NCBI GenBank assembly: GCA_023213395.1
Contig: CM041465.1
Location: 141,181,741 to 141,245,740, forward strand
Length of the DNA: 64,000 nt
Origin: Cycas panzhihuaensis
Lineage: Eukaryota; Plantae; Cycadophyta
Direction: 5' to 3'
The position numbers were made by a program, and so were the translations under genes. How positions within the stretch are numbered: position 1 is the stretch's first letter; the number at the start of each line of letters is the position of its first letter. Positions 4,437-57,427 of this stretch are shown here, piece by piece. The notes below the pieces were generated by a model, which saw nothing but the letters and a program-made list of their open reading frames with translations, did no database searches and was not told the DNA's origin.

Positions 4437-4479
4437 TGGTACTTATCAAATTTGATTTAGTGAAGAGCTCAACTAATCA

Positions 4480-7738: not shown

Positions 7739-9530
7739 TGATTCCTTTATCATTGAGTTATTATTGATTATTTATATTTAATCAATCAAATGAGTCATAT
7801 TAATGTCATCATCTAAGATATTTCTTCAATATATTAAATACTATTAATTATATTATAAGGCCATGAGGGAAATTTGGTTAGTACACTTGTATATTACCTT
7901 TTATTGTAATTATTAAACAATACCTTTTTGGATATTTATATTTATTATTTTTAGGGCATTAAATTAATAAAATTATTATTAATTAATATTTATAATTTTT
8001 TTATATATCATTTAAATCTTTTATATATTTTCATATAGTAAAATTCTATGATATATACATCATATGTATTTCATAGAATAATTTATTATAAAAACCATAA
8101 TAAATGGCGATTCAATTTATAAATCTAATTCGAATACCCTTATATATACCAAATTTTTTATTTGAATTTCAAAATGTAGTTATAATTCAATAAAGATTTA
8201 ATATTGTCAACATGTTGATATTTCTACTAAACTATTATTATCTAAAGAAAGTTATTATAATAAGTCTAAAGGTATCTTATACTATATATCCTACTCAAAT
8301 GGGTTATCACTATTAGAAAATATTATTTTAAAATAACAACCATGCATTATATAATTGTTGGGTGTAATACCCAATTATATACATTAACCCTATATAACAT
8401 ATCTTTATTCATTTGTTTATATTTTATATTAGAGGTTGTGAGCCACTTAGAGATGTGTGTCACCTCTAAGTCGACCAATGGGATTCTCTCACTAGTGGTG
8501 AGCATGTATTATAAGTATATACTCTTCATTCTCTCTAATTGAGTTTTGGCCAATTCTCCACATAAAGTGTTCATGTTGTACATACTTCATTTCTCTTGTA
8601 CTTTATTGTTTATCATTCACTCACCGTTAGATGTTTGTTGTATAGTTTGCATTTGTAATTCTAACATGGTATTAGAGCCCAAGGTTCAATCCTTTGAGGG
8701 CACATCATTGTGAATCTTTTGGACATGTTATCATTTATCTTTAATTTTTATTTGAGGAACCTTTTATGCCACTATTATGGTTTGCCATTGAAAGTTCATT
8801 TTAGGTTATGAAGAACCAACCTTGTGTATATTTTAAGGGAGTTTTTTTGTGAATATTTGGGGTAATTTTGTCATTTTAAGGGGCTAATTTTGAGGCTATT
8901 AAGAGTTATTATAGGTTCTATTGTTTGCGTTTCTTAAACCTACCAGATATATTTTGAAACTACTACAAGTCATTTATTCATGTAGGCCTAATCACCCTAT
9001 AGAATCAACGTGTTTGCTATTAACATGCATGAATTTTTATACATATATGTAGTTATTATAAAGTAATCTCCTTATATACTAGTGGGCAAATTATAATGGA
9101 GATGCTTACAACAGTTGAAGGAGTATTTTTTGGTTATCTAGAAGTAAAAAATGGCTCTATCTTTAAAAAGTTTTTATAATTAAGTAATTTTCTATGAGTG
9201 TTAGGATTAGTAATTTGATAAGCATATCAAACCCAAATGGTGAGCAACAAAAGATAAAGCATGCACAGAATAGACACCATGTTGGAGAATTGGCCAAAAC
9301 TCAATTATGAACAAGTAAGAGTACATACTTATAGTACAACTTCACCACTAGAGAAAGAACCCCATTGGACTACTTAGAGGTGGCACACATATCAAGGTGG
9401 CCCACAACTCTAATATAGAATACACAAGATAGAGAGAGTTTACATAGGGCTAATGGAATTGAGTATTACACCCAACATTCCCTCGTAATAGCCAATTACA
9501 TAAATATCGTCACTTCAATGATAAGCTCAA

Positions 9531-10035
9531 GTCTCCAAAAATTCTTTGGATCGTAACCGCCGCACATAATAGAAAAGTCTTGAAGTCCATATGAAGTAGA
9601 GTCCATCTACCGAATGCATGGGTTATCACCGTGCAACCGCCAGATTGGGTAGGAACTCCCTCTGTATCGTGGATCAATCAGAGTCGGCAAGAGTAGCTAT
9701 ATAAGGTCCCACCCTTGCTCATATGGGAGTGCAAGCGTGAAAATATATATAATAAGCACATGGCACATGGCACATGGCAAGAGTCTCCAAAAGTCTTGGA
9801 TCATAAATCTTTCTTTGGATCATAAACAACTTCACTTAGAATAAAAAGTCTTGAAGTCCATATGAAGAGGAGTCCATCTACCTAATGCATGGGTTATCAC
9901 CGCCGCAACCGCCATTGGGTAGGAACTCCTTTGTATCGTGGAGCAATCGGGAGTGGCAAGAGTAGGCTATAAGGTCCCACCCTTGCTCGTATGGGAGTGC
10001 AAGCAGGAAAATATATATGTATAAAGCACATGGCA
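9531..10035. repeat. ~250-bp imperfect tandem duplication within the 3' internal region of copy B
   Basis: GTCTCCAAAA...GAAGTCCATATGAAG...GGGTAGGAACTCC...GGAGTGCAAG...GCACATGGCA occurs twice (9531-9780, 9783-10035); single in copies A and C. Confidence 0.85.
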
Positions 10036-10156
10036 AGCAAGAGTAGCTTCTAAAAGTGTCCTACCTCTTGCTCAATAGGACTAGCACTTATTCGGCATCT
10101 AATGGCCGGAAATACAATGGCACTATGGCCTCAAACATGCCACATGGGCTAAAAAG

Positions 10157-10353
10157 ATGCCTCATTGGGCTAACAACTTGCCACCATAGGCAAAAATAAC
10201 CAGCATTAGAAATTTTACATGATGCCTCATTGGGCTAACAACTTGCCACCATGGGCAAAAATAACCAGCATTAGAAATTTTTACATGATGCCTCATTGGG
10301 CTAACAACTTGCCACCATGGGCAAAAATAACCAGCATTAGAAATTTTTACATG
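10157..10353. repeat. ~66-bp near-perfect tandem triplication in copy B
   Basis: ATGCCTCATTGGGCTAACAACTTGCCACCAT(A/G)GGCAAAAATAACCAGCATTAGAAATTTT(T)ACATG x3; single in A and C. Confidence 0.95.
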
Positions 10354-13208
10354 ACTGAAAATGATATGTGATTTGTGTAGCACATGTGACTCTCTCTCAT
10401 AAATGAAGTACAATATGATCACAATGGGTTCTTCAAGAGCTAAAAAAGAAGTCCATAGTACATGTCATCTCCCCCATTCGGGGTACATTACATCAAGAAA
10501 ACCTTGAAAATACAATATGTGCCTGAAGAAACTGAGAAAAAATGAAGATAAATAGGAACTTGTGACTTTGAACTTAAAAATCTCCATGAAAACAGCTCCA
10601 AAATGTGTCAAATGACCTGTCAAATGAAAGATCTCTCTGTTACGGATCCAACGCAACAGACAGAACTGAAAACGGACCTCCCAATCTCAAGATACAGTCA
10701 GAAATGTGACAACTACTCCTTAATAATGCCGAAAAAAAAGGATGAAATAGAGATAGCCCCCTTCATAAGCTGACTGTTAGTCATATGAGGGCTCCATAAA
10801 ACTTGGAGCTGAAGTGATGAAGGGCTATATGAATCTGAAAAGATTTTCCAATATAATTAAATCAAAATCTTCAAACCAAACTAAATATAACCATTTTTAT
10901 AATAAGTCGCGTTTGCCAAATCATACGCCCAAAACCAATTTATAATAAGAGTTATAAAACCCTAATTAGGTTACATCCAAAAAGATGATCGAGTGGGGCC
11001 GCCGCCATTGATGTTGCAAGACGTGAGGATGAAGAAGGGCCGCCATGAAATAGATGAAGATGCAGGTTTATGAGCCACTATGAAGAGTGTTTGCAGGTCG
11101 TGTCGTCATGCAGAGTCGGCGCCACTGTTGTGATTGCAGGTTGCAGGCTGGAGCAGAGGAGGGCGCCGCCATTATTCCTAGATGGTCGAAGCTTCTATCC
11201 CTGTAACCTCCAAGAGAAGTATGCTCGAAGTACGAGAATGTTCATCTCAAGATCAGCCGCTTGATTATTAGGTCGCGACCAAACCTCGGAAGGAGGCGTG
11301 TAACGAAGACCGAGTAGAGACATGAAATCTGAAGATGCCAATAACATAAAGGTCGGGGCTCCTCAAGGCCGACAGCAGCGGATATGGGTCCAAACGAGTA
11401 GATCCCCTGCGATTCCCTGCGCAATTATCGACCCTCTCGTAGAGTTCTATGCCCAAAGATTGAGTGCAGATGTTTGGATTTACAACGATCTTCGCCCACA
11501 GCAAGAAGAAGAGTGGAGCTATGCTGGTGATTCTGTGAGAGGCGAAGCCCCAAATTTTGCACCCCTCTATTCTCTCCCTTAGTCACAGGTGCCAAAATGT
11601 TGGCTTGTGCTCCTGCACATAAAACCCGTCGCTTTCCCCACGCAGTTGCCAGAAGATGAAATGCGCATGAATGCTTTGAGAAAATTTATCCTTATCAGCG
11701 TCCTAGATCTTATGGCTCTTGGACTCTAAGGCAGCAGGGACTAATGGATGATAAAGAACACCTTCTGCATCAACAAACCAAGTCTGTAGGCCAAACAGAT
11801 GTTAAGTAGGGGATGGTAGGTTCCCATGAGGCGCATCAAATGCAAGGCGGAGACATGCGGGAGCAATCTTCACAGGAGCAACCTCTTTCCCTACGCCACT
11901 CTCATGGCAAGAATCAGGCCCCACATCTTGATATGAACCTGCAGACTAATCATATCCCTCAGCAGCAATCAAAGTTAACCCATATGGATCAGTAACAAGC
12001 CGAAAAAGACCAGCCAAAGTAAATTACAAATTCTGCCTCTTATCAATAGCATCAACAATCCTCTGGTCAAGGCCATTGGCAACAAGCATGGCTTAACTCA
12101 AGCACCACAAAACATGGCAGTTTTTTTTTTTTTTTTGTTGAAAAATACATAAGAATATAGGCCAGATTTGAAAGCCTTGGATACAAAATTTTTGAGCATA
12201 AAGAAGGTACATATCGAAAAATATATGTATAACACGAAAAGCGTAAATCTTTTGAAAATGGAGTCTCTTCTAGCTTCTGGATAGCGAGAAGCACTCTCTC
12301 AACTCATTAGCAGTTCTGCAAACACTGTCCCAGACATGCAAAGGAAGCAATTAAACAGAATTGGATCCGCACAAAGGATTTGGTGGACTTTCACCGCATG
12401 CAATATTATTGTGGTGCCACATGTGGCGAAACATCCACTAAGCGAGATCAACGGCTTCAAGCGACCACAAAACTTCAAAACAGGCTTGAAAACAGCCTCT
12501 CATCACCATCAAAATAGTCCTTCAAAACTTGATATCAGTCCCATAACAAAATATGCATCAGATATAACTTGAAATGATCTTCAACTTGACAAAGTCACGA
12601 ACAGCGAACACATCAAAAATTTACAAGACTTGAAAGCTCAAAAAACAGAAATGACATGTACTAGGATTTGCAAGAAAGGCCTCCAAGGGTTGAACCTTGG
12701 GCTCTGATACCATGTTAGGATTAGTAATTTGATAAGCATATCAAACCCTAATGGTGAGCAACAAAAGATAAAGCATGCACAGAATAGACACCATGTTGGA
12801 GAATTGGCCAAAACTCAATTATGAACAAGTAAGAGTACATACTTATAGTACAACTTCACCACTAGAGAAAGAACCCCATTGGACTACTTAGAGGTGGCAC
12901 ACATATCAAGGTGGCCCACAACTCTAATATAGAATACACAAGATAGAGAGAGTTTACATAGGGCTAATGGAATTGAGTATTACACCCAACAATGAGGATG
13001 TATTACTTATATAAAAAAATTCAAAAAATTGTATGTGGCCTTCAAACTTGGCCTATGTTTTTTATGTATCAAGAAAGAAAGAGGTATAAAACCATGGATG
13101 TTCCATATAACAGTCTGTTGCAGATTTAAGGTATGGTAGTGGTGACTATATTCTTTGCTACATTTTGGTTTCATTGATAAACTATTATGGATAAAAGCGT
13201 AAACACTT

Positions 13209-13379
13209 AAGATTGAATGTAATTGTTATTATTATGAATTTCTATTTGAAAAGATGGTACAGTGTGCAGATGGTCTTCTTTTCTATTTTGACTGTCTTTG
13301 AAGACATATGGAAGAGTTTATATTTGGAGCTTCACAAGTCCAAAATTCTCTACCTTGCATGGACACTTATAGCTATAAT
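13209..13379 (+). pseudogene. Captured fragment of an RNF216/TRIAD3-like RBR E3 ligase (RING1 region) in copy A
   Basis: Translates KIECNCYYYEFLFEKMVQCADGLLFYFDCL*RHMEEFIFGASQVQNSLPCMDT, matching the RNF216-type pattern IEC.CC..EF.FE...QCAD.HLFC..CL.R...E..FG......CM; lost Cys are TGT>TAT changes. Confidence 0.7.
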
Positions 13380-13420
13380 TTAAAATATTGGCTGGGCACA
13401 TGGATGTTATCCTACATACT

Positions 13421-13504
13421 CAGTGGTATCCTCTAATTAATGAAAGATGCTTCCTTCAATGGCTTGTCAATATTCCTTCTAAATAGGAACAGTTGAGAGC
13501 ATGA
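13421..13504 (+). pseudogene. UPF1: Captured UPF1 fragment (end of CH domain) in copy A
   Basis: Translates [26 protein letters not shown], vs plant UPF1 QWCPLIDDRCFL(Q/P)WLVK(I/V)PSEQEQLRAR; stops are CAG>TAG and CGA>TGA. Confidence 0.9.
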
Positions 13505-13509
13505 ATCCC

Positions 13510-13818
13510 CCATAAAATCTTAGGTTGATGCTTATGTATTTCTAGAATTTAACACCTACGAGGATGATATCAGTTAGCTAGAATTTACAGATTTGAGACA
13601 ACCAATTTATTTTAATAAGCCTTCAAGTATAACTAAAGATGTTAATGGTTTCATTCCTTTAACTACAAACAACAATGACAACAAGAAAAGGAATAATAAT
13701 AACCACACCATTGTCAATGGTGGGCTCATAGGGAGCATCGTTGGTCTTAAATTTAATGAGGACTTCAATAAAAATGATGATGATTTTTTCCAAGAGTGTT
13801 CTTCCTAAGCACGCTTAT
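13510..13818 (+). pseudogene. UPF1: Captured UPF1 N-terminal fragment in copy A
   Basis: Translates VDAYVFLEFNTYEDDIS*LEFTDLRQPI...GSIVGLKFNEDFNKNDDDF(fs)KSVLPKHAY, vs plant UPF1 DAYTFLEFNTQ..DF.YPEF..L.QPI...GLNFEE..DD...EHAC.Y. Confidence 0.8.
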
Positions 13819-13822
13819 AACA

Positions 13823-14299
13823 ATCAAGCTAGGAAAGGAAGATGAGCAGTAAAAAAATAAGCTGGTTGTTAGAGGTCCCATATGACTAGGGATGAGTGTG
13901 CTCTATCTCACCTTATTGCTTAGAAAATCAAACCCCACTAGGTCACATGGTGCATAGACATCACTTGAAGTGGATTCCCTTTGAGCTCTTCCATCCTAGA
14001 TACTTATAGTATTAGCCAAAGTTTCATCGATCTCTATAGGTATGGGTTTGAAACAAGAAGTTTTAATCGCACGTAATGCAAAAACTTTAAGATCTCATGA
14101 AAACCCCCTTAGATCATTACTACAATGCCATTGGTATATTGGATGTATGATTTAGAAGGCCCTATGGGAGTTGTGTCATAGTAGGGAATAATGGTATTCT
14201 ACTGTAGGAAACAAACTTTGTTCATCGATCAACAACCATGAGATTGTAATCCACCTTAATAATGTTAAAACCATCGATTTCAAATCCTGTATCGGCAAA
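13823..14299 (+). pseudogene. Captured fragment of a plant GT29 sialyltransferase-like (GALT29A-type) gene in copy A
   Basis: Translates ...PRYL*Y*PKFHRSL*VWV*NKKF*SHVMQKL*DLMKTPLDHYY...RRPYGSCVIVGNNGILL*...(fs)INNHEIVIHLNNVKTIDFKSCIGK, i.e. sialylmotif L (C.VVGNSGIL...ID.H..VIRLNNA...F...VG.K) plus the GALT29A-type upstream stem region. Confidence 0.85.
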
Positions 14300-15805
14300 T
14301 AGAAATTATCCATGGTAGCAACCTGCTTAAACCAACTTAACAAAAAATATTTTTGTAACCCTAAATCTTATTAGGGTTAATAATATTGATTTTTTTATCT
14401 TATTTAAATTGAGGCAAACGTCAAATTGTTTGAAAAGGGGTTAAAGTTTTTTTACAGTTTTAAAATTAAATTTAATTGTATTAGATGTATTTTTTAGGTC
14501 TGCTAGCCCTCTTGTGCTTCAACCCTTGGTCATATGGAGGCATTTTTCAACAAACAACCAGCCATGAAAGGGGCTAGTCCCTATTTCTCAATTTCGTATA
14601 GAGTACCTCTCATATTTTTACTAAAATCTTGAGTTACAAGACTCTATTTTTGCTCCTATCTATTGTGCTAGATTCGTAATAGAGAAACCTTTCCATTGGT
14701 AAGCCATTTGATGATTTTTGAAGCTATTTTGATGTAGATGTTTTAGCTTGAAGTTTAAATTTTCTGACAAATCTTTATCTTTTCTTATTTTTTTAGATTT
14801 TTAAGGCACTTGCATGTAATTTTTAAGGTTCCATAATATTGTTTGATGTAATATACTCTAAATGGGTGGGGTAATATGTACTATAGTTTAATTTCTTGGC
14901 TCTTGAAGAATCCATTGTGTTCATTTTTTACTTTATTGTATGAGAGAGAGTCATATATATTATACTCAAGTCACATCTATCAATTTTAAGTCATATAAAA
15001 ATATTTATTGCTAGTAATTTTACCCATGGTGACAAGTTGTATAGTCCAAAGAGGCATCTTTTAGCCCATGTGGTATATTTAAGGCCATAAAGCCCATTGT
15101 ATTTTTAGCCATTAGATGCTGAAGAAGTGATAATCCTATTTAGTGAGAGGTAGGACACACTTTTAAAGCTACTCTTACCCACTATGTGTCATGTGCCATG
15201 TGCCATTTATATATTTTTTTCTACTTGCACTCCCATATGAGCAAGGGGTGGAACTTTTTTCAGCTACTCTTGCCAACTCCTTATTGATCCATGTACACAA
15301 AGGGAGTTCCTACCCATTTAGTAGTTGTAGTGGCTGAGGACCCATGCATTCCAGTACATGGACTCTATTTCATATAGATATCGACAGCTTTTTATTAATG
15401 TGTAGTAGCATTTATGATCCAACATACTTTTGAAGACTCGAGCTTATTATTTGATGTGATAATATTCTATGTAATTGACTATTACAGGGGGGAATGTTGG
15501 GTGTAATACCTAATTACATACATCAACCCTATGTAACCTCTCTCTAATCATTTGTTTATATTTTATATTAAAGGTTGTGGGCCACCTACAGATGTGTGCC
15601 AACTTTAAGTTAACCAATGGGATTCTCTTACTAGTGGTGAGCATGTATTATAAGTATGTACTCTTTATTCTCTCTAATTGAGTTTTGGTTAATTCTCCAT
15701 ATAAGGTGTTCATGTTATACATACTTCATTTCTCTTGTACTTTATTATTTATCATTCACTCACCATTAAATGTTTGTTATATAGTTTACATTTCTAATTC
15801 TAATA

Positions 15806-20287: not shown

Positions 20288-20959
<672 letters not shown>

Positions 20960-25600: not shown

Positions 25601-28600
25601 TTTGATGGGAATCACTCTCTATGCTATTTTTCCAATAAGCATACCTCACAAATATATCTATTTATCCTGATGCTTATAAGTTCATATATCATATATAGCT
25701 TAGACATGAGATTTACGCTCTGCATATTTAGGTGACCAAGGCATCGATGTCATAGTTAGTCCTTAGTACTATTGGAGGTGGTTTTCACTTTTGAGTATGA
25801 ACATTCACCTTAATCTTAGTCAAGGGGTAGCTCTTCAACTATGATTGCTTTCTCTTTATTAAGGTGATTGCTATGTGCTATGGAACAAGATTCTTATGGT
25901 GGAATAGTGGGGAGGGGAACCCCATCAAGTTTGTAAATATCTAAGTTTCACTTGTCAATTTGGTTGATAGAGAGCAAGTTCATCTTCATGCTTGGAACTA
26001 GGAAAATATTATTTATGTGATGCCAGAGTTTAGAGTTTTCTAATGCAATGGGAGCCCTTCTAAGTTTAGTCACATCATAGGTGAGGTTATCTCCAAATAT
26101 GATAGTTTGAGCTCTAATTAGATAAGTCTCTTCTAGTAAGTCTTCAGTTCTAGTCATATGATGTGTGGCACTAAAATATAGTAACCAAGAATTATCATCA
26201 TGTTAGGATGAAAAATCTACAAAAAATAAGTTTTAGGATGAGGGTTGAGAATTAGCTACATCACCTCACTATTGTATATTTTGGTTGTTCCTTAAGTTTC
26301 TTAGTTAGGACCTTTACCTCTTTATTTGGCGATGGTTCTGGTTCTATCTCTAATTCTAATTTTATTTGAAGTATTGGCCTACCTATTGAAAAGTTGGTCC
26401 TCCTTATGTAAATTTAGGACCTTTTTATTGAAAGTAAGGGCTACCTAATTATCCCCCTTAGTTTTTAAGCATCTAGAAATTAATTTATCTTCTCTTAAAG
26501 TCAGTAGTAAGGTGCCTATTTTTTCCACAATACATGCATATGACATTTTATATATATTATTGATTCCTTAGTGGTTAAGATTATTATGGCTATTAAGGTT
26601 GTTGAGACTATTAAGAAGAAGTACCGACCTATTGAAACTATGGTTACTAATATATTAGCTACTAACTTGGCTATTATGAGATGTTTAAGGAGCTAAACTA
26701 ATGAATAAGGGTTTGCAGATGACTTGGTTATTAATTTCGCTATTGAGGGGGCTTATTCCCTCTTAAATTCCCAGTTACAAATGTAAGAGTAGAGTCAGAG
26801 GTAGATGTCACTCCTTGGTAATTGAGAATGTTCTCATCCCTGAGTAAGAGTCCTTTAAAAGTATTGAAATCTATTTTAGTAAAGGTATCATAGAGTCTAG
26901 AGACAAAGTTATTATATTCTATCAGAAGGATTTGAGGATGTTAGACATAAGGTCATGATATAAAGTATCAGTTAGGTGGGCTATGATAGTTCTAATAAAA
27001 GGTATGCTAAATAGGTTTGCTTTTAAAGTTAAGGATCTAAAGTTATCCTTCCTTTCACAAAGGGTACCAATGATGCTCTATGATTCATAGAAGGTTTGGG
27101 TTATTTTAATATTTTAATCTTCTTAGTCTTCTATAGCTAAGTGGAGAAATAAAAGGGCTATATTATCCTTAGTTTTAAAATTGGCTAAGGCAATTGGATT
27201 AAATAGAATTTCAATGGTGGGATCATTTGGATCCTTAGTAGATTTGGGTAGAGATATGTCACCATTGATACCTAATAATTATTTATAATAAGAAGATTTT
27301 TAACTTATTTCTTCTAAATTAAATAGTCATTCGTACCATTAAGTTTAATGGTATTAGATAAAAGCATTTGGATTGCCATTTTGGTATGTCCTTTAGTGTT
27401 TTTTAGTATTTTTTTATATCATATCTACCTAGTAGAGCTACTAAACTAGAATGCTAAGTTTAGAGGGGTCTCTAGAAAGCCCTTAGTTACTATTCTGTCT
27501 AGTGGTGTTTGCCTACAAGTTGTCAATTAGGGACATTATATACTAATACATGAGCTCTAGGCTCTATATACCTTAGTACGTATGCTACTGAGAAGGTCAA
27601 AGACCCCCCTAACTTGTTAGTCTACCTATGCCAGACTTATGCATAATGATAGATCCAGTTGAGAACTACAAATCAAGGCACTTACCTTTTTTGGGTCTAG
27701 CCTAATCTCCAAATACTAAGGTAGGGTTTACACCTTAGCATGCTATTTAATACATCTAATATCTATAGAATCTAAGAAAATCCAATGACGTGTATAGAGT
27801 GGTAACTTAAAGGGTCCTAATCGTTCCCCTTGCAAGGCTGGTAAAGTTTTCTTGTAGATCAGGACTTATATTTCTTAATGTTTTAGGTTGAAATTGATTT
27901 TTAAAATGTGATTTTATTTATAGAAAATGTTTTTTTTATAAAATAAAAATAAGGAGACTAAAAAAGAAATAAGAGGATTAGGATGATCTTTTAATAGACT
28001 TTACTCCAAGTGAAGAACAACCTCCTTCATATAAGAAGGACACCTACAACCACAAAGTACAAGTACTTGTTAGCAAAAAAATAAGATAACATAATATATT
28101 AGATCATGAAAACAACATTTGGCAACAAAAGATCCTTTACAAACTAAGAGATAAGCCTCCAATTAGTGATATAAGACTTATAATTACTTAATAAAGAAGG
28201 TCAATTTTAATAACTTATAACTCCTTAGAAAATTACTCAAATTTGGTTGGAATTGGTTCTAATCTAGAGAGCTCTAAACTAGGATTACAATGGTTCAGAC
28301 AATGCACAAATCTAACTTCCTATTAAGGAGATATTATAAAAGCAGTGTTAGGTACTCCTTATGGGCAAGAAACTAGGTTGGGATGGCTTAAGCCCCATTC
28401 ACTAATAAGTCTTCGGTCTTAATAGGCCTATATAGGACCACCCAATAGGCTGCAAAGGGGCTAGCAGACTTGAAAAAGATTTAAATATGAAACAATATTT
28501 TCGATTTTATAATAATTATAAAAAAGAGCTTAAAATTTTTGAAATGTACCCTTTTTGAAAAAGAAACCACAGCCACATGAGGTGAACAATGTGATCACTA

Positions 28601-29719
28601 GATAGAGCAAGGCTCCTATGTGAATCTAAAATTGATTTTAATCAAATTAAGTATAATCTAAATTATAGAAAAAATAAAAATTAAAATAATTTTAACTTTC
28701 TATGGCTGTGTGTGAATTTTTTTGGATTGCGGTGAACTAGATCAAAGATGACACAATTGAATCAAGTTATTTATATATCAATCTGCTCCCCGATCATAAA
28801 GAGGACGCCTATAAGAGTAGAGGGGAGATTTAACCTGATCATCAAACTCATATGAGATCGAATGGTGCATCAAAGGGTTAAAAGAGGGTGAATAAAAAGC
28901 AACAGTAATTAGGGTTAATACCATTAATGAACTCATTTTAAGTAATAAAATGTATGATTATACTACACTATAGAGGGATGCATAGTAGTCTCACTCTCAA
29001 TTGCAGTGATTATGAGATCAGACAATCATGATGAGCAGTGTTGATGGCTTGACAAATTTGGGATGATAAATGATGAGACATTTCTCATAAATGGTCAATG
29101 TTTCTTTGAGAGTGATATCAAAGCTAAGACTGGAGACTATTCATGGATAATAGGACAACACCCAAAGATTGGTTTTCTCATGAACACTCCCTATAGATCA
29201 TTAGATGGACTAAAAACAATTGAAAATGAGTGAAAAATAAGGAAATAGAGGTGAATGAGATGTTATTAACAAATAAGTCATCATTTCTTAGTTAAACACA
29301 TAATAAACTAAATAACATGCATATTAGAGGTTCTGATACTATGTCAAATTCATCAACACGATCATATAGCAATGTACATTCAAATATAAATTAAAAAAAT
29401 AGAGATCTAATACTACAATAATGAAAATTAGTTGTAAAATAGTGTGATCATCAAATTGGTTGAACAATCATGTCTAATTTTGGTAAAGTTTCCATATATA
29501 AAAACTTTCAATGTACAAAGCATAGGGTTGTACTTAATTTATAAGCATGCAAACCTGAAATATGAAAATATAATTAACCGACATATCAACAAAGTGGGTA
29601 GACTCGACCAATTTAATAGACACAATAAAATTTACAAAGGGGCTACCCTAATGTTATATTGAATACAAAGTATATGATACATAAATATTACAATGAAAGT
29701 GTCATTATTAATTTTAACA
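22630..29719 (-). mobile_element. Full-length but decayed Ty1/copia element D (LTRs 29342-29719 and 22630-23008; gag-pol ~27379-23040; ~2-kb leader) inserted in the gypsy RT
   Basis: ~379-bp diverged direct repeats TGTCAAATTCATCAAC...TTTTAACA; PBS rc 29329-29341; PPT rc 23009-23018; TSD TTAAA/CTAAA; integrase ORF 24931-25242 (HLRIFGC, KKLDDKS...FLGY...KAYKVYD); RT IYMDDL at ~23950-23970; RNaseH KHIKV.HHFI at ~23165-23195. Confidence 0.92.
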
Positions 29720-32700
29720 CTAAAATCTATTTTAGGTATACCTTCTTCTTTAATTCTAATTTAATGGTAATATGATCTTAAATGTATTTTAGAAAAATAT
29801 TTAGTATCATTTAATTGATCTAAAAAATCATCAATTTTCAGAAATGGATTTTTATTTTTTATTATTAATTTGTTTAATTATTAGTAGTCAATACATAACC
29901 TTAAGGTGTCATCTTTCTTTCTAATGAATAAAATTAATGCTTTACATGGATCAATATTGGGTCTAATCTCATCCTATTCTATTAGTTCTTGTAGTTGTAT
30001 TCTACGCTCAGTTAATTCTACAATGGATTATTGATATAGAGCTCTCGATACTAGTTCTGGTCTAAGTATGGGATCTATTATTTATTTCATAACAATTTTT
30101 AGGGATAACTCTTTAATTTCTAAAGGGAATACATCCTTGAATTCTTTAAAAATTATTTGACCAATAGGATTATTACTATATATTTAGGTGTTTTTTATTA
30201 CCAATGTGAAAAAATATTTACATCCTTTATACACACATCTTTTAATCTATATTATAGAAAGGGTGTGCAATTGTGTGGATCACTCTTTCCCTTGAATAAT
30301 CCCAAATCCATCAAGATGATTGATTACTATAACTTATTTCTTGTGGTAACCAACATAAGCATTGTTGGATCCTAATTAAACCATATATATTATAGTGTCG
30401 TGGTCTCTTAGATCTTATAATTAAGAATCCTCAATTGTTTGATAACCATTTATTTATAATCTTAATTCCTCTAAAATAGATTCAATTTACCTAAGTATTT
30501 CATTATCATCTAACTCTACCGAAGAGGGTTCTATTTTATGCATGTTAAATTTAATTCTTTTACTAATTTTGGTAAAAGAATGTTAGATCTACTTCCAGAG
30601 TCTATCAAGGCGATAAAAGATTATTCATTTATTTTTCTCTTAACTTGTAACAAAGATAATTATATGTGTATGTTGTTTGACTCAATGGCAATTGAATGTG
30701 CATATTAGGTTGACATTATATTAGGTCTTTTATAGTTAGGTTTCTTTTTCTCTATGCATGTTTTGAAGTTAAAGACATCTTTTATCAAATGCACTTCTCC
30801 ACATTCCCAACATTTAATAGTTCTTGATTAGCCTTCCTAATTATAATCTTGTTTATTTAACTGTCCTAAAGCTTTCTTGAATAAACTTTAACAGGTATAA
30901 CTTTTCTTTATAATAATATTATTATAGCTATTTATTTTTCTTTGATGGAAGGATTTCTTTTATGCCAGATGGTACCACCGATATAAGTGCATTCTTGTTC
31001 ATGTGACCATTCTTTTCTTTTTCCTTCACCTAGTTTTTATTCTTTATACCTTTTAATAAATGTGGCTAGTTCATCTACAAAATCAAGATTTTCACCACAA
31101 ATGCTAGTATAACATTCTCAGTTAAGCCCATTTATAAATCTTATTAGTCTATCTTTACCTTGGGCAAAGGGTCTAAATCTATTCAAGGTTTTAAAGTGTC
31201 CTTTATATTTCCTTATATCAAGGCTTCTCTGCTTTAAATCATAAAACTCATTTAATTTATTTTGGAGGAAGTTTTCAAAAATAAATTTATTGTAGAATAT
31301 CTTCTTAAATTTATTCCATAGGACTAACTCAGTCTTTATCTTATGACTTTGAAGTACATCTTACCACTAGGTGAGTGTAAGTCTTTTCAATTAATATATG
31401 ATTATTCTAGTTTTGTTATTATGGTTTAATTTTTAAGACTCAAAATGCCTCTCCATGTTGTCCAACCAATCTTTTGCCTCTTCTCCAGTGCCTCTTTTCC
31501 CTTCATATTCTATAAGTTCCAATTTTCTATTATATCAATCTCCTTCTATTACCTTTTTCTTCCTTTTATAGTGAGAAATTGCATTTGATTACGAGGCTAT
31601 TACATTAAGGTTTAAAAGATTCTTAGTAGTAGATGTTGTTTTTGTACTCATAGAACTTCCATCTAATTTATCTCTTCTTATGTTCCCTTTATTATTTCTT
31701 TTACTTTTATCCTTATATTTTCATGTTTTGTTTTCTATTTTATGCATCTCCTATATGCTTTTATTTTTATATTTCTTATTGTTTTATCTTGAGGATTCAC
31801 CCTTACTTTCTTTACTTCTTAATGTGGATTCTTCCATTTTTTCTCTTAGTGATTCTTATTTACCCTAGGAATGTTACTTGTTTGTCATGTCTATTGGAAT
31901 TAGGAATGTAACCATCATATCAAACCCTAATAGTAAGTAATAAAAAGATGAAGTATGTACAAAATAGATACCATGCAGGAGAATTGGCTAAAACTTAATT
32001 ATGAACAAATAAGAGTACATACTTATAGTACAAGCTCACCACTAGTGAGAGAACCCTATTGGACTACTTAGAGGTGGCACACATATCAAGGTGACCCACA
32101 ACTCTAATACAAAATACAAAAAATAGAGAGAGTTTACATAGAGTTAATGTAATTAGGTATTACACCCAACATTCCCCCCTGTAATAGTCAATTACATAAA
32201 TATCGCCACATCAAATGATAGATCAAGTCTTTAAAAGTCTGTTGGATCACAAATGCTACTACGTAGAATAAGAAAGTTGCCAAAATCCATATGAAGTGGA
32301 GTCCATCTACCAAAATGCATAGGTCATCAGCCACTGCAACCGCCAGTTGGGTAGGAACTCCCTTTGTGTACGTGGATCATTCAGGAGCTAGCAAGAGTAG
32401 TTGAATAAGGTCCTACCCCTTACTCATATGGGAGTGCAAGTAAAAAAAAATATATAGAAGGCACATGGCGCACGACACATGGCAGGTAAGAGTAGCTTCT
32501 AAAAGTGTGTCCTACCTCTTGCTCAATAGGACTAACACTTCTTCAGCATCTAATGGTCAAAAATACAATGACACTATGTCCTCAAACATGCCACATGGGC
32601 TAAAAGACACCTCATTGGGCTAACAACTTACCACTATGGGCAAAATAACCAGCATTAAAAGTTCTTACATGACTGAAAAAATGATATGTGACTTATGTAG

Positions 32701-33758
32701 CACATATGACTCTCTCTCATAAATGAAGTACAATATGATCATAATGGGTTCTTTAGGAGCTAAAAATAAATTCATGGTACATGATATCCCCCACATTTTC
32801 AGTACATTACATCTAAAAATACAATATGTGCCTATAGAAGCTAAGAAAAAATGAAGACAAATAGTAACTTATGACTTTGAATGAAAAAAACTCTATGAAA
32901 ATAGCTCCAAAAAGTATCAAATTACCCGCCAAATTAAAGGTCTCTTTGCTACGAATCCAACGCAATAGATGGGACTGAAAAAGGACCTCCCAATCTTAAG
33001 ATATAGCCCAAATAGTGACTAGTACTCTAGAAAATGACAAAATTGGAGACTAACCCCCTCCATGAACTAGTTGTAGGTCACATTAAGTCTCCATATGACC
33101 TAGGGCTGAAGTGATGAGGAGCTGACAGACTCAAAATCATTATATAATATAATTTAACTAATTTTTCAAAACTAAAAAAACTAAACCCCCTTTTATAATG
33201 AATTCACATCCGCGAATAATTAAAAATGCATCTAAAATAAAATATTAATCAAATCATAAGTGAACCCTATTAGGGTTCATCCACCAAAAAATTATTTAGG
33301 TTTCTTTGTGCAAGGGTTGCTGCCATGATTATCGAGTTGTAGGTTCGCCATTGCATCATCGTGATTGCAAGGGTACAGATCGTTCGTCTCTTCATTGTTG
33401 TGCAGGTCATTGTCATATATGCTAAGCTCCAATGCTCTGTTCTTCCCAGAAAATACATACTCATGTCAAAAATAGAGGATTGTTGTTGATGCAGGTCAAA
33501 AGCATAGAGTGATCACCATGGATTGAGCAAGTTAGTCCATCATATCTACGTCACCACTGTGTGTAGAACCGCCATTGTCTGCGAAGTGATTGTGGGTTTT
33601 ACCATTGCCGCACAGGAAGTCATCGACATTGTGTTTGTAGGTTTGAAGCAATGGTCACAGCTTCAGTTTCTCAAGGTCATTGGCTCGAACCCCAAGAAAT
33701 GAATCTATCATGTTTAGTTTGCTCCATGAATGGCATCTGTGTCTCTAATTATAGCCTT

Positions 33759-33835
33759 ACCACAGAAATCAAGACTCGCAGTCACACTAGGAGAGACATT
33801 TCTATTCTCCAACGATGGGAAACTACATGCGTATA
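33759..33835 (-). pseudogene. DPB2: Captured DNA polymerase epsilon subunit B fragment (mid-protein) in copy C
   Basis: Translates YACSFPSLENRNVSPSVTASLDFCG, vs plant DPB2 pattern .TCGFPPLEDR......AG.DFFG. Confidence 0.65.
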
Positions 33836-33840
33836 TCACC

Positions 33841-33987
33841 ATTTGCAAAAGACCTAAGATTGAAGCATGTGACCCTTATGTACTTGAATATTTTCTTCTT
33901 AAATTTATCTAGTAGTATTATCGTATGAGGTGTGGGATACAACCGTGGACAGTGATCATAATTCTAAATGACAGGTTACACCGTTAA
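33841..33987 (-). pseudogene. DPB2: Captured DNA polymerase epsilon subunit B fragment (C-terminal) in copy C
   Basis: Translates LTV*PVI*NYDHCPRLYPTPHTIILLDKFKKKIFKYIRVTCFNLRSFAN, vs plant DPB2 L.VQPIIWNYDH.LRLYPTPHTIVLGDKSEQKAFKYTGITCFNPGSFS. Confidence 0.9.
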
Positions 33988-34021
33988 GTTCACATAATGC
34001 TCATTTAGATATGTCAATACG

Positions 34022-34138
34022 ATAGTTCACATTACCTACTTTCAAAATCTCTCCTATATTCTTCAGAACTTGTTTAATGTGCTCCTCCACACTCTTTGAG
34101 ATAAATTTTCTAGTCTCAAGAACAAGACCCATTATGCC
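34022..34138 (-). pseudogene. RIDA: Captured RidA (YjgF/YER057c/UK114 reactive intermediate deaminase) fragment in copy C
   Basis: Part of ORF 34001-34207: GIMGLVLETRKFISKSVEEHIKQVLKNIGEILKVGNVNY, vs plant RidA [39 protein letters not shown]. Confidence 0.88.
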
Positions 34139-36439
34139 CCTGTAATAGAAGATGACATATGCCAGAACATGCATGTATGACTTTTTTAGGAAACAGGAGA
34201 GTCCCATATAGAAGTATGCACTGCAACATTTCAGTGGTAGGAGATAGATCTAGGAGATGAAAAGAGTAGATACAATGGTAGCTCAATAATAAAATTTGGC
34301 AGATCTCCCATTTTTTCTTTTGGAAATACATAAGAATATAGGCCACATTTTGAAGGTCTTAAATATAGATTTTTTTTATTTTATTTTTTAAATACAATAA
34401 ATCACAAAGAGAGTATATATTAGCATATGAATATAGAACCTTTATCCACGTGTAGATCTGTAAAAAAAAAATTGAAATAGAGTCGCTCTTGGCCAAGAAG
34501 GACTCTCTCAACTACTGTCAATGATCCTGGTTACATTCTTGTCCACTGACGTGCAATAGAGATGGTCTTCTAGTAGTTGGAATCTAAACATAAGATTTTG
34601 TGGACTTTCACCAGCATGCAATATTATTATGGCGCCACATGCAAGGAAGATATCCACTTGAGTAGCTTCAACAGGCTTCAAATATCTTCAAAAACTTCAA
34701 AATGGGCTTGAAAACAACCTCTCATCATCATCAAAATAGCCCTTCAAAACTTGATAATAGTCCCATAACAAAATATGCATAAGATGTAACTTGAAATGAT
34801 ATTCAACTTGACAAAGTCACCAAACAGGTACATAAAAAAAAATTACAAGGCTTGAAATCTCAAAAAACAAGGATAACATGTACTAGGGTTTGTAAGAAAT
34901 GTCTCTAAAAATTGAACCTTGAGCTCCGATACCATGTTAGAATTAGGAATGTAACAATTATATCAAACCCTAATGGTGAGTAACAAAAAGATGAAGTATG
35001 TATAAAATTGACACCATTTTAGAGAATTGGCCAAAACTCAATTATAAACAAATAAGAGTACATACTTATAGTACAAGCTCACCATGAGTGAGAGAACCCC
35101 ATTAGACTACTTAGAGGTAGAACACATATCAAGGTGGCCCACAACTCTAATAAAAAATACCAAAAATCGAGAGAGTTTACATAGGTTTAATGTAATTGGG
35201 TATTACTCCCAATAATGCCTTTCTTTTCATGTTCTAACTTATGTCTTATCTTAGTTATCTTTGCCATCATTCTTTATAATCTCTTTTCAAGGGTTTGATT
35301 TTTTTGTCATTCTGGCTAAGTCATGGTCATTACTCATATCGATTGGATTAGTTGATAGTTGACATATGTTTACAAGCTATTACGTTAATTCATAAATAAA
35401 TGGTATATGGTTAAAAATAAGATGTACTGAGATATTAATATAATAAGGAATTTATGAATCAAGGTTAAGGAACCTCTCTAAACATGGTCATTTAGAAAGA
35501 GAGGAAGGAAGAGGTTATTCTCCTTAGGGTGTTGGAGTTCTAACCTTAGCAAAGTTGTAAATGCTAGTTCATTTCTCTTCAACAAGCTTTCAAAAGAATA
35601 TGTTTCTACCTAGTGAAATTATCTAGAGGAAGGTAGATTTAAGGAAACATATATTATCACTTTTTCTTTCTAACTATTAACAAAAACAATATAGTAGTAG
35701 TGTAAATATTAGCCTCAAAAGAGATTTCAAAATATAGCACACTTAATTATTAATGACCTTGAGGGTATGTAAAACAACTTAGGGGGTTATGGGAAATGAT
35801 GCTCCTCAACCTCCTTCCCCCATCTTTTTAAAATTATTTATAGAGTTTTAACTACCCATGACTTAGCTAAATATGATAACTATATGTTTCCATAGAAAAC
35901 AAACATATCTATAAAAAGTAAAACCTAAAACAATCTAAGAAAAAAAAAAAGAAGTATTGGGATACTTAATCTCATTAAAACAATAATGAAAAAGGCAAAA
36001 GAGAATAGAAAATAAACTATGATTTAACTATAATGAGAAATGGACCCTACACCAATATCAAATTTGTAGGAAAAGATAAAGATAACTATTTACAATAATA
36101 GTAGTACATGGTCCTTTCAAATATGATTCAAAAGATGAGATGGATAAGGCCCAATAACTAGCAATAAACTCAAACCATTTAGAGGTATCTTGAATAGTCT
36201 TGTCAAGCCTATAAGGGGAAGACGTATTAAAAGTATATAGGTTCATAAAGAAAATTAAAGTAGTAGACCTTATAGATTAAAGAAGTAGACATAACTAGCA
36301 ATAATGGAAAAGTTATTGAATGAGGGATAAATAGGTTACATAAGGCACTTATATTCCATGGAAGTAGTAATATAAGAAACCAGGAAAACTAAAATAGAGA
36401 TGAAATTATCCTCCATCACATAGACTTTTCCTGTGTAAA

Positions 36440-57418: not shown

Positions 57419-57427
57419 GGAAGACTC

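What the first reader, a model, noticed from the sequence alone, without database searches (positions are those of the whole stretch)
8356..35214. A 'Pack-LTR' family: non-autonomous LTR elements with a fixed slot holding a different host-gene mosaic in each copy
Seen: copies A (8356-15805), B (9199-12991) and C (31892-35214) share LTR, PBS, a ~0.6-kb 5' block, a ~1.1-1.5-kb 3' block and PPT, with no gag/pol. The ~1-1.2 kb between the blocks is unrelated between copies (A 13085-14300, B 11175-12120, C 33640-34310). A holds RNF216-like, UPF1 x2 and GT29 pieces; C holds RidA and DPB2 x2 plus unidentified pieces. All identified pieces are ~80-480 bp, uninterrupted and sense to the element. Established: single LTR elements with captured spliced host fragments exist (maize Bs1), and Pack-MULEs/Helitrons capture at the DNA level. 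Inference: different cargo at the same position in 3 of 3 copies points to a routine, site-directed multi-template-switch capture system, i.e. an exon-shuffling vehicle and a fossil sample of the transcriptome co-packaged in particles.
Basis: partly seen in the sequence, partly recalled or inferred. Interest (0 to 1): 0.95.

Follow-up and report, generated by a model that had tools for sequence, protein, structure and literature searches.

The report
LTR elements carrying swapped host-gene scraps
Three related, protein-less plant jumping genes from a family with thousands of copies each carry a different patchwork of ordinary host-gene messages at the same internal position; this is a tidy, family-level example of a known habit (gene capture by retrotransposons), not a new kind of system.

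Summary
The structural observation holds. A (8356-15805, + strand), B (9199-12991, - strand, nested in A) and C (31892-35214, - strand) are related LTR elements. Each has TG..CA LTRs, an initiator-tRNA-Met primer site and a polypurine tract, and none has a detectable gag or pol.

They share a ~0.6 kb 5' block and a 1.15-1.5 kb 3' block. The ~1.0-1.2 kb between the blocks shows no similarity between copies. Its edges agree within about 20-40 bp.

Tools confirmed RNF216-like and UPF1 pieces in A and RidA in C, all in sense orientation. DPB2 (E 0.49) and GT29 (a lead only) are weak.

Transcript-like contigs of a relative match A's RNF216 and UPF1 pieces. They also show that B's slot is mostly pieces of two expressed low-copy genes, which I could not name.

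Laid genomic contigs put the LTRs and blocks at hundreds to thousands of times the flank level, and the slots near flank level.

Best reading: reverse transcriptase switched onto co-packaged host mRNAs, in the dispensable middle of a natural "retro-vector".

"Routine and site-directed" is not shown: only three copies were seen, the edges are zones, and A's mosaic exists in at least two diverged copies. Comparable capture is published (Bs1, pepper, rice, sorghum). The scan noted similar elements elsewhere in this genome.

The parts
8356..8666 (+). Element A, 5' LTR (TGTTGGG...CTAACA)
   Evidence: 89.7% identical to 15495-15805; followed directly by the PBS
8667..8678 (+). Element A primer-binding site TGGTATTAGAGC (initiator tRNA-Met type)
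   Evidence: read from sequence and regex
8667..9198 (+). Element A 5' block, first part (interrupted by B; continues 12997-13080)
   Evidence: 58-66% alignment to the 5' blocks of B and C; summed contig depth 490-1400
9199..12991 (-). Element B, complete, nested in A in the opposite orientation. 5' LTR 12713-12991, PBS 12701-12712, 3' LTR 9199-9477, PPT 9478-9486. TSD ATGAG at 9194-9198 and 12992-12996
   Evidence: LTRs differ at 1 of 279 positions; TSD and PBS/PPT read from sequence
12109..12712 (-). Element B 5' block; includes an (A)16 tract at 12121-12136 (sense) about 18 nt before the cargo
   Evidence: 71% alignment to C; alignment of the three copies; depth 3800-59800
10990..12108 (-). 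Element B slot (49% GC)
   Evidence: no similarity to the A or C slots; summed depth 7-230 against 870-45800 in the 3' block and 3800-59800 in the 5' block
11682..12102 (.). B cargo piece from expressed transcript 'T12' (2440-nt contig). 11682-11840 and 11853-12102 match it; 105 nt of the transcript are replaced by 12 nt in B
   Evidence: X17 record 12 and loose ends at 11682 and 12102. Gene not identified. A composition score favours the sense strand
11170..11658 (.). B cargo piece from a second expressed transcript 'T11' (2195-nt contig)
   Evidence: X17 record 11 and loose ends at 11170 and 11658; no protein homologue in either strand's long ORF
9478..10989 (-). Element B 3' block, non-coding, with internal tandem duplications
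   Evidence: alignment to A and C; duplications 9542-9765/9811-10035 and 10156-10222/10287-10354; depth 8700-45800 over 9500-10699 and 870-2300 over 10700-10899; no Pfam hit
12997..13080 (+). Element A 5' block, second part (after the B insertion)
   Evidence: A internal 533-616 aligns to C 469-622
13081..14310 (+). Element A slot
   Evidence: no similarity to the B or C slots; depth 0-65 over 13100-14099
13203..13390 (+). RNF216-like (RING1 of an RBR ligase) fragment, sense, with one stop
   Evidence: 13203-13298 hits only RNF216 chains 7m4m/8eb0, E 9e-4; a 2500-nt transcript contig matches 13210-13366
13397..13500 (+). UPF1 fragment a (end of the CH domain), sense
   Evidence: E 4.8e-6 to human UPF1 CH domain; transcript loose ends translate to ALKDMNWDL and RQISAQQIN
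13534..13805 (+). UPF1 fragment b (N-terminal region), sense, placed after fragment a although it lies before it in the mRNA
   Evidence: X17 record 15 matches 13619-13788, then 'goes back 372' to 13417-13500; outer limits read from the translation
14192..14299 (+). Possible GT29 (sialyltransferase-like) fragment, unconfirmed
   Evidence: no Pfam or PDB hit; nearest named atlas clusters carry PF00777 at score 0.76, a lead only
14311..15494 (+). Element A 3' block, ending in PPT ACAGGGGGGAA (15484-15494); telomere-like inverted motif at 14357-14378
   Evidence: 73% alignment to C over 1.2 kb; sequence
15495..15805 (+). Element A 3' LTR
31892..35214 (-). Element C, complete. 5' LTR 34935-35214, PBS 34923-34934 (TGGTATCGGAGC), 5' block 34291-34934, slot 33328-34290, 3' block 32172-33327 with PPT at 32172-32182, 3' LTR 31892-32171
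   Evidence: LTRs 88.5% identical; flanks ATGTC/ATGCC
34004..34160 (-). RidA fragment in C, sense
   Evidence: E 1.2e-9 to Arabidopsis RidA 5hp7, residues 22-69; Pfam Ribonuc_L-PSP E 0.007
33790..34030 (-). Probable DPB2 (DNA polymerase epsilon subunit B) C-terminal fragment in C, sense, abutting the RidA piece
   Evidence: 33826-33963: sole PDB hit is human POLE2 residues 465-503, E 0.49. Outer limits rest on my reading of the translation. The atlas gave nothing

Best explanation
A, B and C belong to a very abundant, non-autonomous, copia-like LTR retrotransposon family. It keeps only the parts needed in cis: LTRs, an initiator-tRNA-Met primer site, a ~0.6 kb leader, a >1 kb non-coding 3' region and the polypurine tract. 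It must be copied by proteins supplied in trans.

The middle is dispensable. In different lineages it has been overwritten by short sense-strand pieces of host mRNAs.

The most likely route (inferred, not shown): host mRNAs are packaged together with the element RNA. During minus-strand synthesis the reverse transcriptase leaves the element template near the start of the 3' block. It copies parts of one to several host RNAs, sometimes the same mRNA twice in the 'wrong' order, as for UPF1 in A. It then returns to the element template near the end of the leader.

Only products that keep both cis-acting ends can be copied again. That alone would make the cargo sit in one 'slot'. Each cargo-bearing product then founds a small lineage.

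The cargo is decaying pseudogene material, not working genes.
For: Shown:
- LTR/PBS/PPT/TSD anatomy and orientation.
- No gag/pol domain in the longest reading frames.
- Shared blocks, unrelated slots, and edges agreeing within ~20-40 bp.
- Sense-strand RNF216, UPF1 (two pieces) and RidA, and probably DPB2.
- Pieces of unlinked genes abut directly: RNF216/UPF1 and RidA/DPB2.
- X17 contigs of 1-2.5 kb match single cargo pieces for 84-489 bp and then run on as unlike sequence at both ends. In X17 these low-copy sequences are deeper than the roughly thousand-fold more abundant LTR family, so X17 is RNA.
- The UPF1 pieces are in reversed order relative to the transcript.
- B has near-identical LTRs and a perfect TSD, so it integrated with its cargo.
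- Summed contig depth is 3,800-82,000 on B's LTRs, 5' block and the bulk of its 3' block, 7-230 in the slots and 11-26 in the flank.

Published basis: abnormal template switching between co-packaged RNAs, and Bs1's three transductions (PMC13317346).
Against: - No parental gene locus could be read, so intron loss, the direct mark of an RNA origin, is untested.
- The orientation and identity of B's two pieces are unresolved.
- About a third of each slot is unexplained.
- Microhomology at the junctions cannot be judged without both parental sequences.
- Edges that agree this closely in three copies are tighter than simple survivorship predicts.
- The contents of the thousands of other copies are unknown.
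- Summed contig depth is only a rough proxy for copy number; the tool says so itself.
Confidence: 0.6

Rival explanations
1. Few old captures, then ordinary amplification. The slot was made once, or a few times, in an ancestor. A, B and C belong to different old subfamilies, each with a fixed cargo, and most family copies share one or a few canonical interiors, possibly the gag-pol of an autonomous relative. Under this reading there is no ongoing or site-directed capture.
For: - A's mosaic junctions are spanned by two differently diverged genomic contigs in the same run (13340-13625 at 93%; 13453-13985 at 84%), so cargo is inherited.
- LTRs of A, B and C differ by 14-21%, which marks old subfamilies.
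- Only ~10% of the LTR-level depth extends over the distal part of B's 5' block, so most copies differ there too.
Against: - All three copies seen have unrelated cargo. If a canonical interior made up more than ~63% of copies, this would happen in fewer than 5% of draws of three (simple arithmetic).
- Depth falls in steps from both blocks towards the centre of B's slot. That fits repeated overwriting better than one event.
- The scan's unchecked notes list further mosaic-bearing LTR elements in this genome.
Confidence: 0.22
2. DNA-level acquisition. The fragments entered already integrated elements as filler DNA during double-strand-break repair, by gene conversion or ectopic recombination, or as LINE-mediated processed pseudogenes landing in an A/T-rich spot of the element.
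For: - An A-rich tract, (A)16 in B, lies ~18 nt before the cargo.
- A LINE with endonuclease and reverse-transcriptase domains lies in the same window.
- Short scrambled multi-gene patches resemble repair filler.
Against: - The A-rich tract belongs to the block shared by all three copies. It lies upstream of the cargo, not at a 3' tail.
- No internal TSDs or poly(A) tails flank the pieces.
- All five identified pieces are sense (chance 1 in 32 if independent).
- B moved as a unit with its cargo after acquisition.
- The same region was hit in three copies.
Confidence: 0.1
3. A dedicated capture device. Specific sequences at the two slot edges (the A-rich tract; the start of the 3' block with its telomere-like inverted motif) actively promote template exit and re-entry, so the family samples host mRNAs at a high rate by design.
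For: - Edges agree within ~20-40 bp in three copies with unrelated cargo.
- Motifs conserved in all three copies lie near both edges.
- Several similar notes exist in the same genome.
Against: - Three copies only.
- The edges are zones, not points.
- No junction could be shown to use the motifs.
- Survivorship of cis-acting ends, plus descent from a common deleted ancestor, explains a shared slot without any device.
Confidence: 0.08

Closest known systems
Maize Bs1 (transducing LTR retroelement)
   Same: A non-autonomous LTR element whose interior holds fragments of three different host genes, acquired through RNA (PMC13317346, citing Jin and Bennetzen 1994 and Elrouby and Bureau 2001). Multi-gene mosaic, no full-length ORFs captured.
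   Different: Bs1 is a low-copy element with one fixed cargo that became a new chimeric gene. Here three relatives from a family of apparently thousands of copies carry three unrelated cargos at one position, and the cargo is decayed.
LTR-driven retroduplication (pepper, tomato, potato, rice; rice/sorghum captured-gene surveys)
   Same: Host coding sequence with reduced intron number lies inside LTR elements. About 72% of retroduplicated pepper NLRs lie in non-autonomous LTR elements without gag/pol, and 1,398-3,898 genes per genome lie inside LTR elements (PMC5664825). Rice and sorghum surveys are in PMC3726574. In angiosperms ~33,000 TEs per genome hold exon fragments, and ~14% of host TEs hold two or more (PMC13477047).
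   Different: Those surveys report whole or large gene copies, or isolated fragments, across many families. As far as I read them, they do not describe one family with a common slot, nor short scrambled multi-gene mosaics.
Abnormal template switching products (Veju_L TRIM, BARE-2; Sabot and Schulman 2007)
   Same: Chimeric LTR elements explained by reverse transcriptase switching between two RNAs packaged together (PMC13317346).
   Different: In those cases the partner RNA is another retrotransposon or is unknown. Here the partners are ordinary host mRNAs, several per event.
Acute transforming retroviruses and engineered retroviral or mini-Ty1 vectors (from general knowledge)
   Same: The cis-acting ends are kept (LTR, PBS, packaging leader, PPT), the coding middle is replaced by sense-strand host sequence, and the element is replicated in trans by a helper.
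   Different: The cargo here is not a functional gene, and there are several short pieces per element. No helper element was identified.
Pack-MULE / Pack-CACTA / Helitron capture
   Same: Family-level, recurrent carriage of host gene fragments, often from several genes, between conserved element ends.
   Different: Those are DNA transposons with TIRs or rolling-circle ends that capture genomic DNA, including introns. Here the ends are LTRs with PBS and PPT, and the cargo matches transcripts.

Membership tests
LTR retrotransposon, Ty1/copia-like, non-autonomous | Two direct LTRs ending TG...CA | tested here: met
   All three pairs; ends TGTTGGG...CTAACA, with point changes in old copies
LTR retrotransposon, Ty1/copia-like, non-autonomous | 5-bp target-site duplication | tested here: inconclusive
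   B perfect (ATGAG), C 4 of 5 (ATGTC/ATGCC), A none (ATAAT/AGAGT)
LTR retrotransposon, Ty1/copia-like, non-autonomous | PBS complementary to the 3' end of initiator tRNA-Met directly after the 5' LTR, and a PPT directly before the 3' LTR | tested here: met
   TGGTATCAGAGC (B), TGGTATTAGAGC (A), TGGTATCGGAGC (C); PPT ACAGGGGGGAA or ACGAGGGAA. The match to tRNA-iMet is from general knowledge; no tRNA was aligned
LTR retrotransposon, Ty1/copia-like, non-autonomous | Copia-type order of pol domains or a copia-type reverse transcriptase (needed to assign the superfamily) | not testable with these tools
   No pol is present, so 'copia-like' rests only on the PBS type and the 5-bp TSD
LTR retrotransposon, Ty1/copia-like, non-autonomous | Absence of gag and pol coding capacity | tested here: met
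   No ORF above 104 aa inside the elements; no retroelement Pfam domain in 50 reading frames tested
Transducing / retroduplicating LTR element (Bs1 type) | Host-gene sequence lies between the LTRs of a structurally complete element | tested here: met
   RidA, UPF1, RNF216; transcript contigs match the B and A slots
Transducing / retroduplicating LTR element (Bs1 type) | Captured sequence lacks the introns of the parental gene | not testable with these tools
   No parental locus is available. The only indirect evidence is continuous matches of 421-489 bp to transcript contigs
Transducing / retroduplicating LTR element (Bs1 type) | Cargo in the sense orientation of the element | tested here: met
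   5 of 5 identified pieces. B's two pieces are unresolved
Transducing / retroduplicating LTR element (Bs1 type) | Element transposed with its cargo | tested here: met
   B: LTRs 278/279 identical, perfect TSD, nested in A. A-type mosaic seen in two diverged contigs of the same run
Pack-type DNA transposon (Pack-MULE/CACTA) | Terminal inverted repeats and superfamily-specific TSD; capture of genomic DNA | tested here: not met
   The ends are direct LTRs with PBS and PPT. It works like a Pack element only in outcome
TRIM / LARD (named classes of non-autonomous LTR elements) | TRIM: total length under ~1 kb with LTRs of ~100-250 bp. LARD: LTRs of several kb and a long conserved non-coding interior (from general knowledge) | tested here: not met
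   Total length 3.3-3.8 kb and LTRs of 279-311 bp; this falls between the two classes

The most novel reading that the evidence does not exclude
This roughly thousand-copy-plus non-autonomous family is a natural retro-vector that overwrites its middle again and again. Two hot zones, the A-rich end of the leader and the start of the 3' block, favour template exit and re-entry, so a large share of copies carry their own mosaic of co-packaged host mRNAs. The family would then be a genome-wide fossil sample of the RNAs present in the cells where it replicates, and a standing source of exon shuffling.
Probability: 0.25. Interest if true: 0.75.

Novelty: new variant of a known kind. Interest (0 to 1): 0.5.

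Why it matters
If a family-wide census confirms many unrelated cargos between the same two blocks, this family would give three things:
- a rare natural measure of how often a plant reverse transcriptase switches onto host mRNAs, and where;
- a list of host RNAs that get into virus-like particles;
- a defined minimal set of cis-acting sequences for a plant LTR vector.

As it stands, it is a clean, well-delimited example of a known process. It also carries a practical warning for annotation: short decayed pieces of UPF1, RidA, RNF216 and similar genes inside such elements are pseudogene scraps, not genes.

Tried and rejected
**Other family copies outside the window**
- Two exact-pattern scans of metagenome contigs were run: PBS plus leader gave 0 hits, and PPT plus LTR start gave 9 loci.
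- None of the 9 loci resembles the elements beyond the 20-mer, so they are chance matches.
- A look-up of the scan's notes by sequence was blank.

**Naming B's cargo**
- Pfam on 20 B-slot reading frames, both strands: nothing credible.
- PDB on the best sense frame: nothing.
- Homologue searches on the 92-aa (+) and 104-aa (-) frames: nothing. The length limits of that tool make this blank weak.
- The exhaustive representative search on the 47-aa sense frame returned one bacterial Listeria-Bacteroides-repeat protein. It matched through many weak repeats and was rejected as spurious.
- A codon-position composition score favours the sense strand for 11682-12102 and no frame for 11170-11658. It separated the positive controls only weakly.

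**Other checks**
- rRNA or other structured-RNA origin of B's GC-rich slot: no Rfam family in the window.
- Gag remnant in the 3' block: no Pfam support.
- Extra B-C similarity upstream of the 3' block, suggested by MAFFT: not supported by blastn between the slots.
- Microhomology at the T11 junction (GCGCCGC on both sides): dropped, because only one parental sequence is known.
- Atlas look-up for DPB2: uninformative.

Full report
**1. What is there**

The window is AT-rich (about 30% GC) and plant-like. The region holds three structurally complete LTR elements.

| Element | Span | Length | LTR pair | LTR identity |
|---|---|---|---|---|
| A | 8356-15805 | 3,652 bp once B is removed | 311 bp each | 89.7% |
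| B | 9199-12991 | 3,793 bp | 279 bp each | 278 of 279 positions |
| C | 31892-35214 | 3,323 bp | 280 bp each | 88.5% |

- B lies inside A and is flanked by a perfect 5-bp duplication, ATGAG.
- C is flanked by ATGTC/ATGCC.
- A has no recognisable duplication.

Orientation follows from the sequence itself.
- In A the left LTR is followed at once by TGGTATTAGAGC, and the right LTR is preceded by ACAGGGGGGAA. A is therefore on the + strand.
- In B and C the same primer site (TGGTATCAGAGC, TGGTATCGGAGC) and polypurine tract are found on the reverse strand. B and C are on the - strand, and B sits in A head to tail in reverse.
- This primer site is the initiator-tRNA-Met type usual in copia elements (general knowledge). 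With no pol present the superfamily cannot be proven.

**2. Shared blocks and the slot**

Default blastn finds the LTRs and a long 3' block shared by all three copies (A-B over a shorter stretch).
- A 5' block of about 0.6 kb: B-C 71% identical, A against B and C 58-66%.
- A 3' block of 1.15-1.5 kb: 63-78% identical.

In window coordinates the part between the blocks is 13081-14310 in A, 10990-12108 in B and 33328-34290 in C.

The three middles have no similarity to each other on either strand at E<=1, and none to the rest of the window.

The edges agree closely.
- At the 5' side all three copies share a motif, an A-rich tract ((A)16 in B, 12121-12136 in sense) and about 18 more bases before they part.
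- At the 3' side, homology of A and B to C begins within about 30 bp of each other. This is some 60-100 bp before a telomere-like inverted motif (AACCCTAA...TTAGGGTT, 14357-14378 in A).

The 'slot' is therefore real to within roughly 20-40 bp. They are about 190-310 bp too far out at the 3' edges of B and C.

**3. No coding capacity of its own**

No reading frame inside the elements exceeds 104 codons. None of 50 frames tested against Pfam hits a gag, protease, integrase, reverse transcriptase or RNase H model. These included the longest sense frames of the 3' block. The elements are non-autonomous.

**4. The cargo**

*In A*
- 13203-13298 hits only RNF216 chains in the PDB, at the start of RING1 (E 9e-4).
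- 13379-13483 hits the UPF1 CH domain (E 4.8e-6).
- The frame translations show the RNF216 piece running straight into the UPF1 piece. A second UPF1 piece from the N-terminal region follows at about 13534-13805.

*In C*
- 34004-34160 matches Arabidopsis RidA residues 22-69 (E 1.2e-9; Pfam E 0.007).
- It is directly followed by a stretch whose only PDB hit is the C-terminus of human POLE2/DPB2. That hit is not significant on its own (E 0.49).

*Unconfirmed*
- The GT29 piece (14192-14299) has no Pfam or PDB support.
- It has only a low-score atlas lead to PF00777.
- I found no second, separate DPB2 piece.

*Strand and state*
- All identified pieces lie on the sense strand of their element.
- They carry stops and frameshifts, so they are decaying.

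**5. Evidence from public runs (one call allowed)**

No run holds the stretch as a whole. I laid window 8100-14099 against contigs of three genomic runs (X1, X3, X4, three coded organisms) and one small run of organism C guessed to be RNA (X17). Matches counted from 80% likeness.

*(a) Abundance.* The table gives summed contig depth. The tool warns that this is not a copy number, so these figures are orders of magnitude only. Single contigs have depth about 3-9.

| Region | Summed contig depth |
|---|---|
| Left flank | 11-26 |
| A's 5' LTR | 8,900-28,800 |
| B's LTRs (bins lying mostly within them) | 46,000-82,000 |
| B's 3' block, 9500-10699 | 8,700-45,800 |
| B's 3' block, last 200 bp towards the slot | 870-2,300 |
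| 200 bp after B's primer site | 28,000-60,000 |
| Distal part of B's 5' block | 3,800-5,800 |
| B's slot | 7-230 (7-22 in its centre) |
| A's slot, 13100-14099 | 0-65 |

The family is therefore very abundant and the slot contents are low copy. The fall towards the centre of B's slot is stepwise on both sides.

*(b) X17 is RNA in practice.* In X17 the low-copy slot sequences are deeper (80-297) than the highly repeated LTR family (30-72). This is the reverse of the DNA runs, including X4 of the same organism.

*(c) X17 contigs match single cargo pieces.* Contigs of 1.0-2.5 kb match one cargo piece each and then run on, unlike, at both ends.
- A 2,195-nt contig matches 11170-11658.
- A 2,440-nt contig matches 11682-11840 and 11853-12102. 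It has 105 nt where B has 12.
- A 2,500-nt contig matches the RNF216 piece (13210-13366).
- A 1,018-nt contig matches 13619-13788 and then 'goes back' to 13417-13500.

The loose ends beside 13420 and 13500 translate to ALKDMNWDL and RQISAQQIN, which continue the UPF1 match. Three conclusions follow.
- Both UPF1 pieces of A come from one transcript.
- A holds the two UPF1 pieces in the opposite order, without the roughly 350 nt that separate them in the mRNA. That distance is my estimate from the protein positions.

*(d) A's mosaic occurs more than once.* Genomic contigs span A's mosaic junctions twice in the same run, at different divergence: X1 13340-13625 at 93% and 13453-13985 at 84%. X4 has 13445-14096 at 84%. 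The A-type mosaic therefore exists in more than one copy, or in diverged orthologues. Cargo is inherited, not unique to every insertion.

**6. Naming B's cargo failed**

Pfam, PDB, two homologue searches and the exhaustive representative search gave nothing credible. The single representative hit is a bacterial repeat protein matched through many weak repeats. A composition score favours the sense strand for 11682-12102, but it is a weak test. The orientation of B's cargo is unresolved.

**7. How it most likely works**

*Shown*
- The cis-acting ends are kept.
- The middle is replaced by sense-strand pieces of several unlinked host transcripts, joined directly.
- One transcript was used twice, out of order.
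- At least one element integrated with its cargo (B).
- B's slot is 49% GC against a ~30% genome. The slots of the older A and C are 35% and 39%. LTR divergence is 0.4% for B against 10-12% for A and C.

*Inferred*
- Host mRNAs were packaged with the element RNA.
- Reverse transcriptase switched from the element template to host RNAs and back during minus-strand synthesis. This is the 'abnormal template switching' route reviewed in PMC13317346.
- Products that lost either end could not be copied again, which by itself confines cargo to the middle.

The close agreement of the edges and the stepwise depth profile suggest either preferred switch zones or repeated overwriting inside earlier cargo. 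Neither can be decided from three copies.

*Rivals*
- A few old captures followed by ordinary amplification.
- DNA-level filler or LINE-type insertion. The conserved position of the A-rich tract, the absence of tails and internal duplications, and the sense bias argue against this.

**8. Comparison with what is known**

- Bs1 of maize holds pieces of three host genes (PMC13317346).
- In pepper about 72% of retroduplicated NLRs sit in LTR elements without gag or pol, and 1,398-3,898 genes per genome lie inside LTR elements in six plants (PMC5664825).
- Rice and sorghum surveys list hundreds to over a thousand captured genes (PMC3726574, PMC13317346).
- Across angiosperms about 33,000 TEs per genome hold exon fragments, and about 14% of host TEs hold two or more (PMC13477047).

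The kind is therefore known. I did not find three things described in those papers:
- one abundant non-autonomous family with a common, narrowly bounded slot;
- unrelated short multi-gene mosaics in each examined relative;
- scrambled use of one mRNA.

The element is not a Pack-type DNA transposon, because it has LTRs, a PBS and a PPT rather than TIRs. By size it fits neither TRIM nor LARD.

**9. Earlier notes of this scan**

The same genome has several unchecked or partly followed-up notes of defective LTR elements with host-gene patches at a fixed internal position. Most report the cargo as antisense, and one reports a three-gene spliced mosaic. So the scan has found this kind of thing before on other DNA of this genome. 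I could not read those stretches. Here the cargo is sense by PBS/PPT orientation.

**10. Verdict**

This is a new variant of a known kind, of moderate interest, with a clear census that would raise or lower it.

Noticed in passing
window 12121-12136 (B, sense strand); aligned positions in A (~13040-13075) and C (~34300-34335): An A-rich tract, a pure (A)16 in the young copy B, lies about 18 nt upstream of the point where the three copies diverge. It is part of the shared 5' block. It may be a preferred re-entry point for template switching.
   Followed up: partly
window 14357-14378 (A); aligned positions in B (~10950-10965) and C (~33255-33270): A telomere-repeat-like inverted motif (AACCCTAA...TTAGGGTT) lies near the start of the 3' block in all three copies.
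   Followed up: no
window 9542-9765 / 9811-10035 and 10156-10222 / 10287-10354: Internal tandem duplications lie inside B's non-coding 3' block (86% and 97% identical). C and A have single copies of these segments.
   Followed up: partly
window 9300-10700 and 12500-12780, run X17: Contigs of an RNA-like run of a related organism match the family's LTR and blocks at up to 98% identity (for example 10289-10618). This hints that family members are transcribed, or that DNA is carried over in that run.
   Followed up: no
window 20148-21250: About 1.1 kb of very AT-rich simple tandem repeat (period about 8-14, 68 overlapping repeat registers, GC about 20%). It produces spurious long ORFs.
   Followed up: no
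window 22629-22817 and 29341-29529: Another pair of direct repeats (189 bp, 85% identical, 6.7 kb apart), possibly the LTRs of an unrelated element.
   Followed up: no
window 53279-58117 (- strand): A degenerate non-LTR (LINE) retrotransposon: endonuclease (Exo_endo_phos), RVT_1 and RVT_3/RNase H domains in separate ORFs. The region is GC-rich (40-49%).
   Followed up: partly
window 51734-52192 (+ strand): A copia-type gag fragment (Retrotran_gag_2, E 6e-7). It has no LTR similarity to A, B or C, so it is not an evident helper.
   Followed up: partly
window 8694, runs X1/X3/X4: About 60-100 contigs per run share A's LTR and primer site but diverge together from A 28 bp after the primer site starts. 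Most relatives of A's LTR therefore carry a different leader.
   Followed up: no
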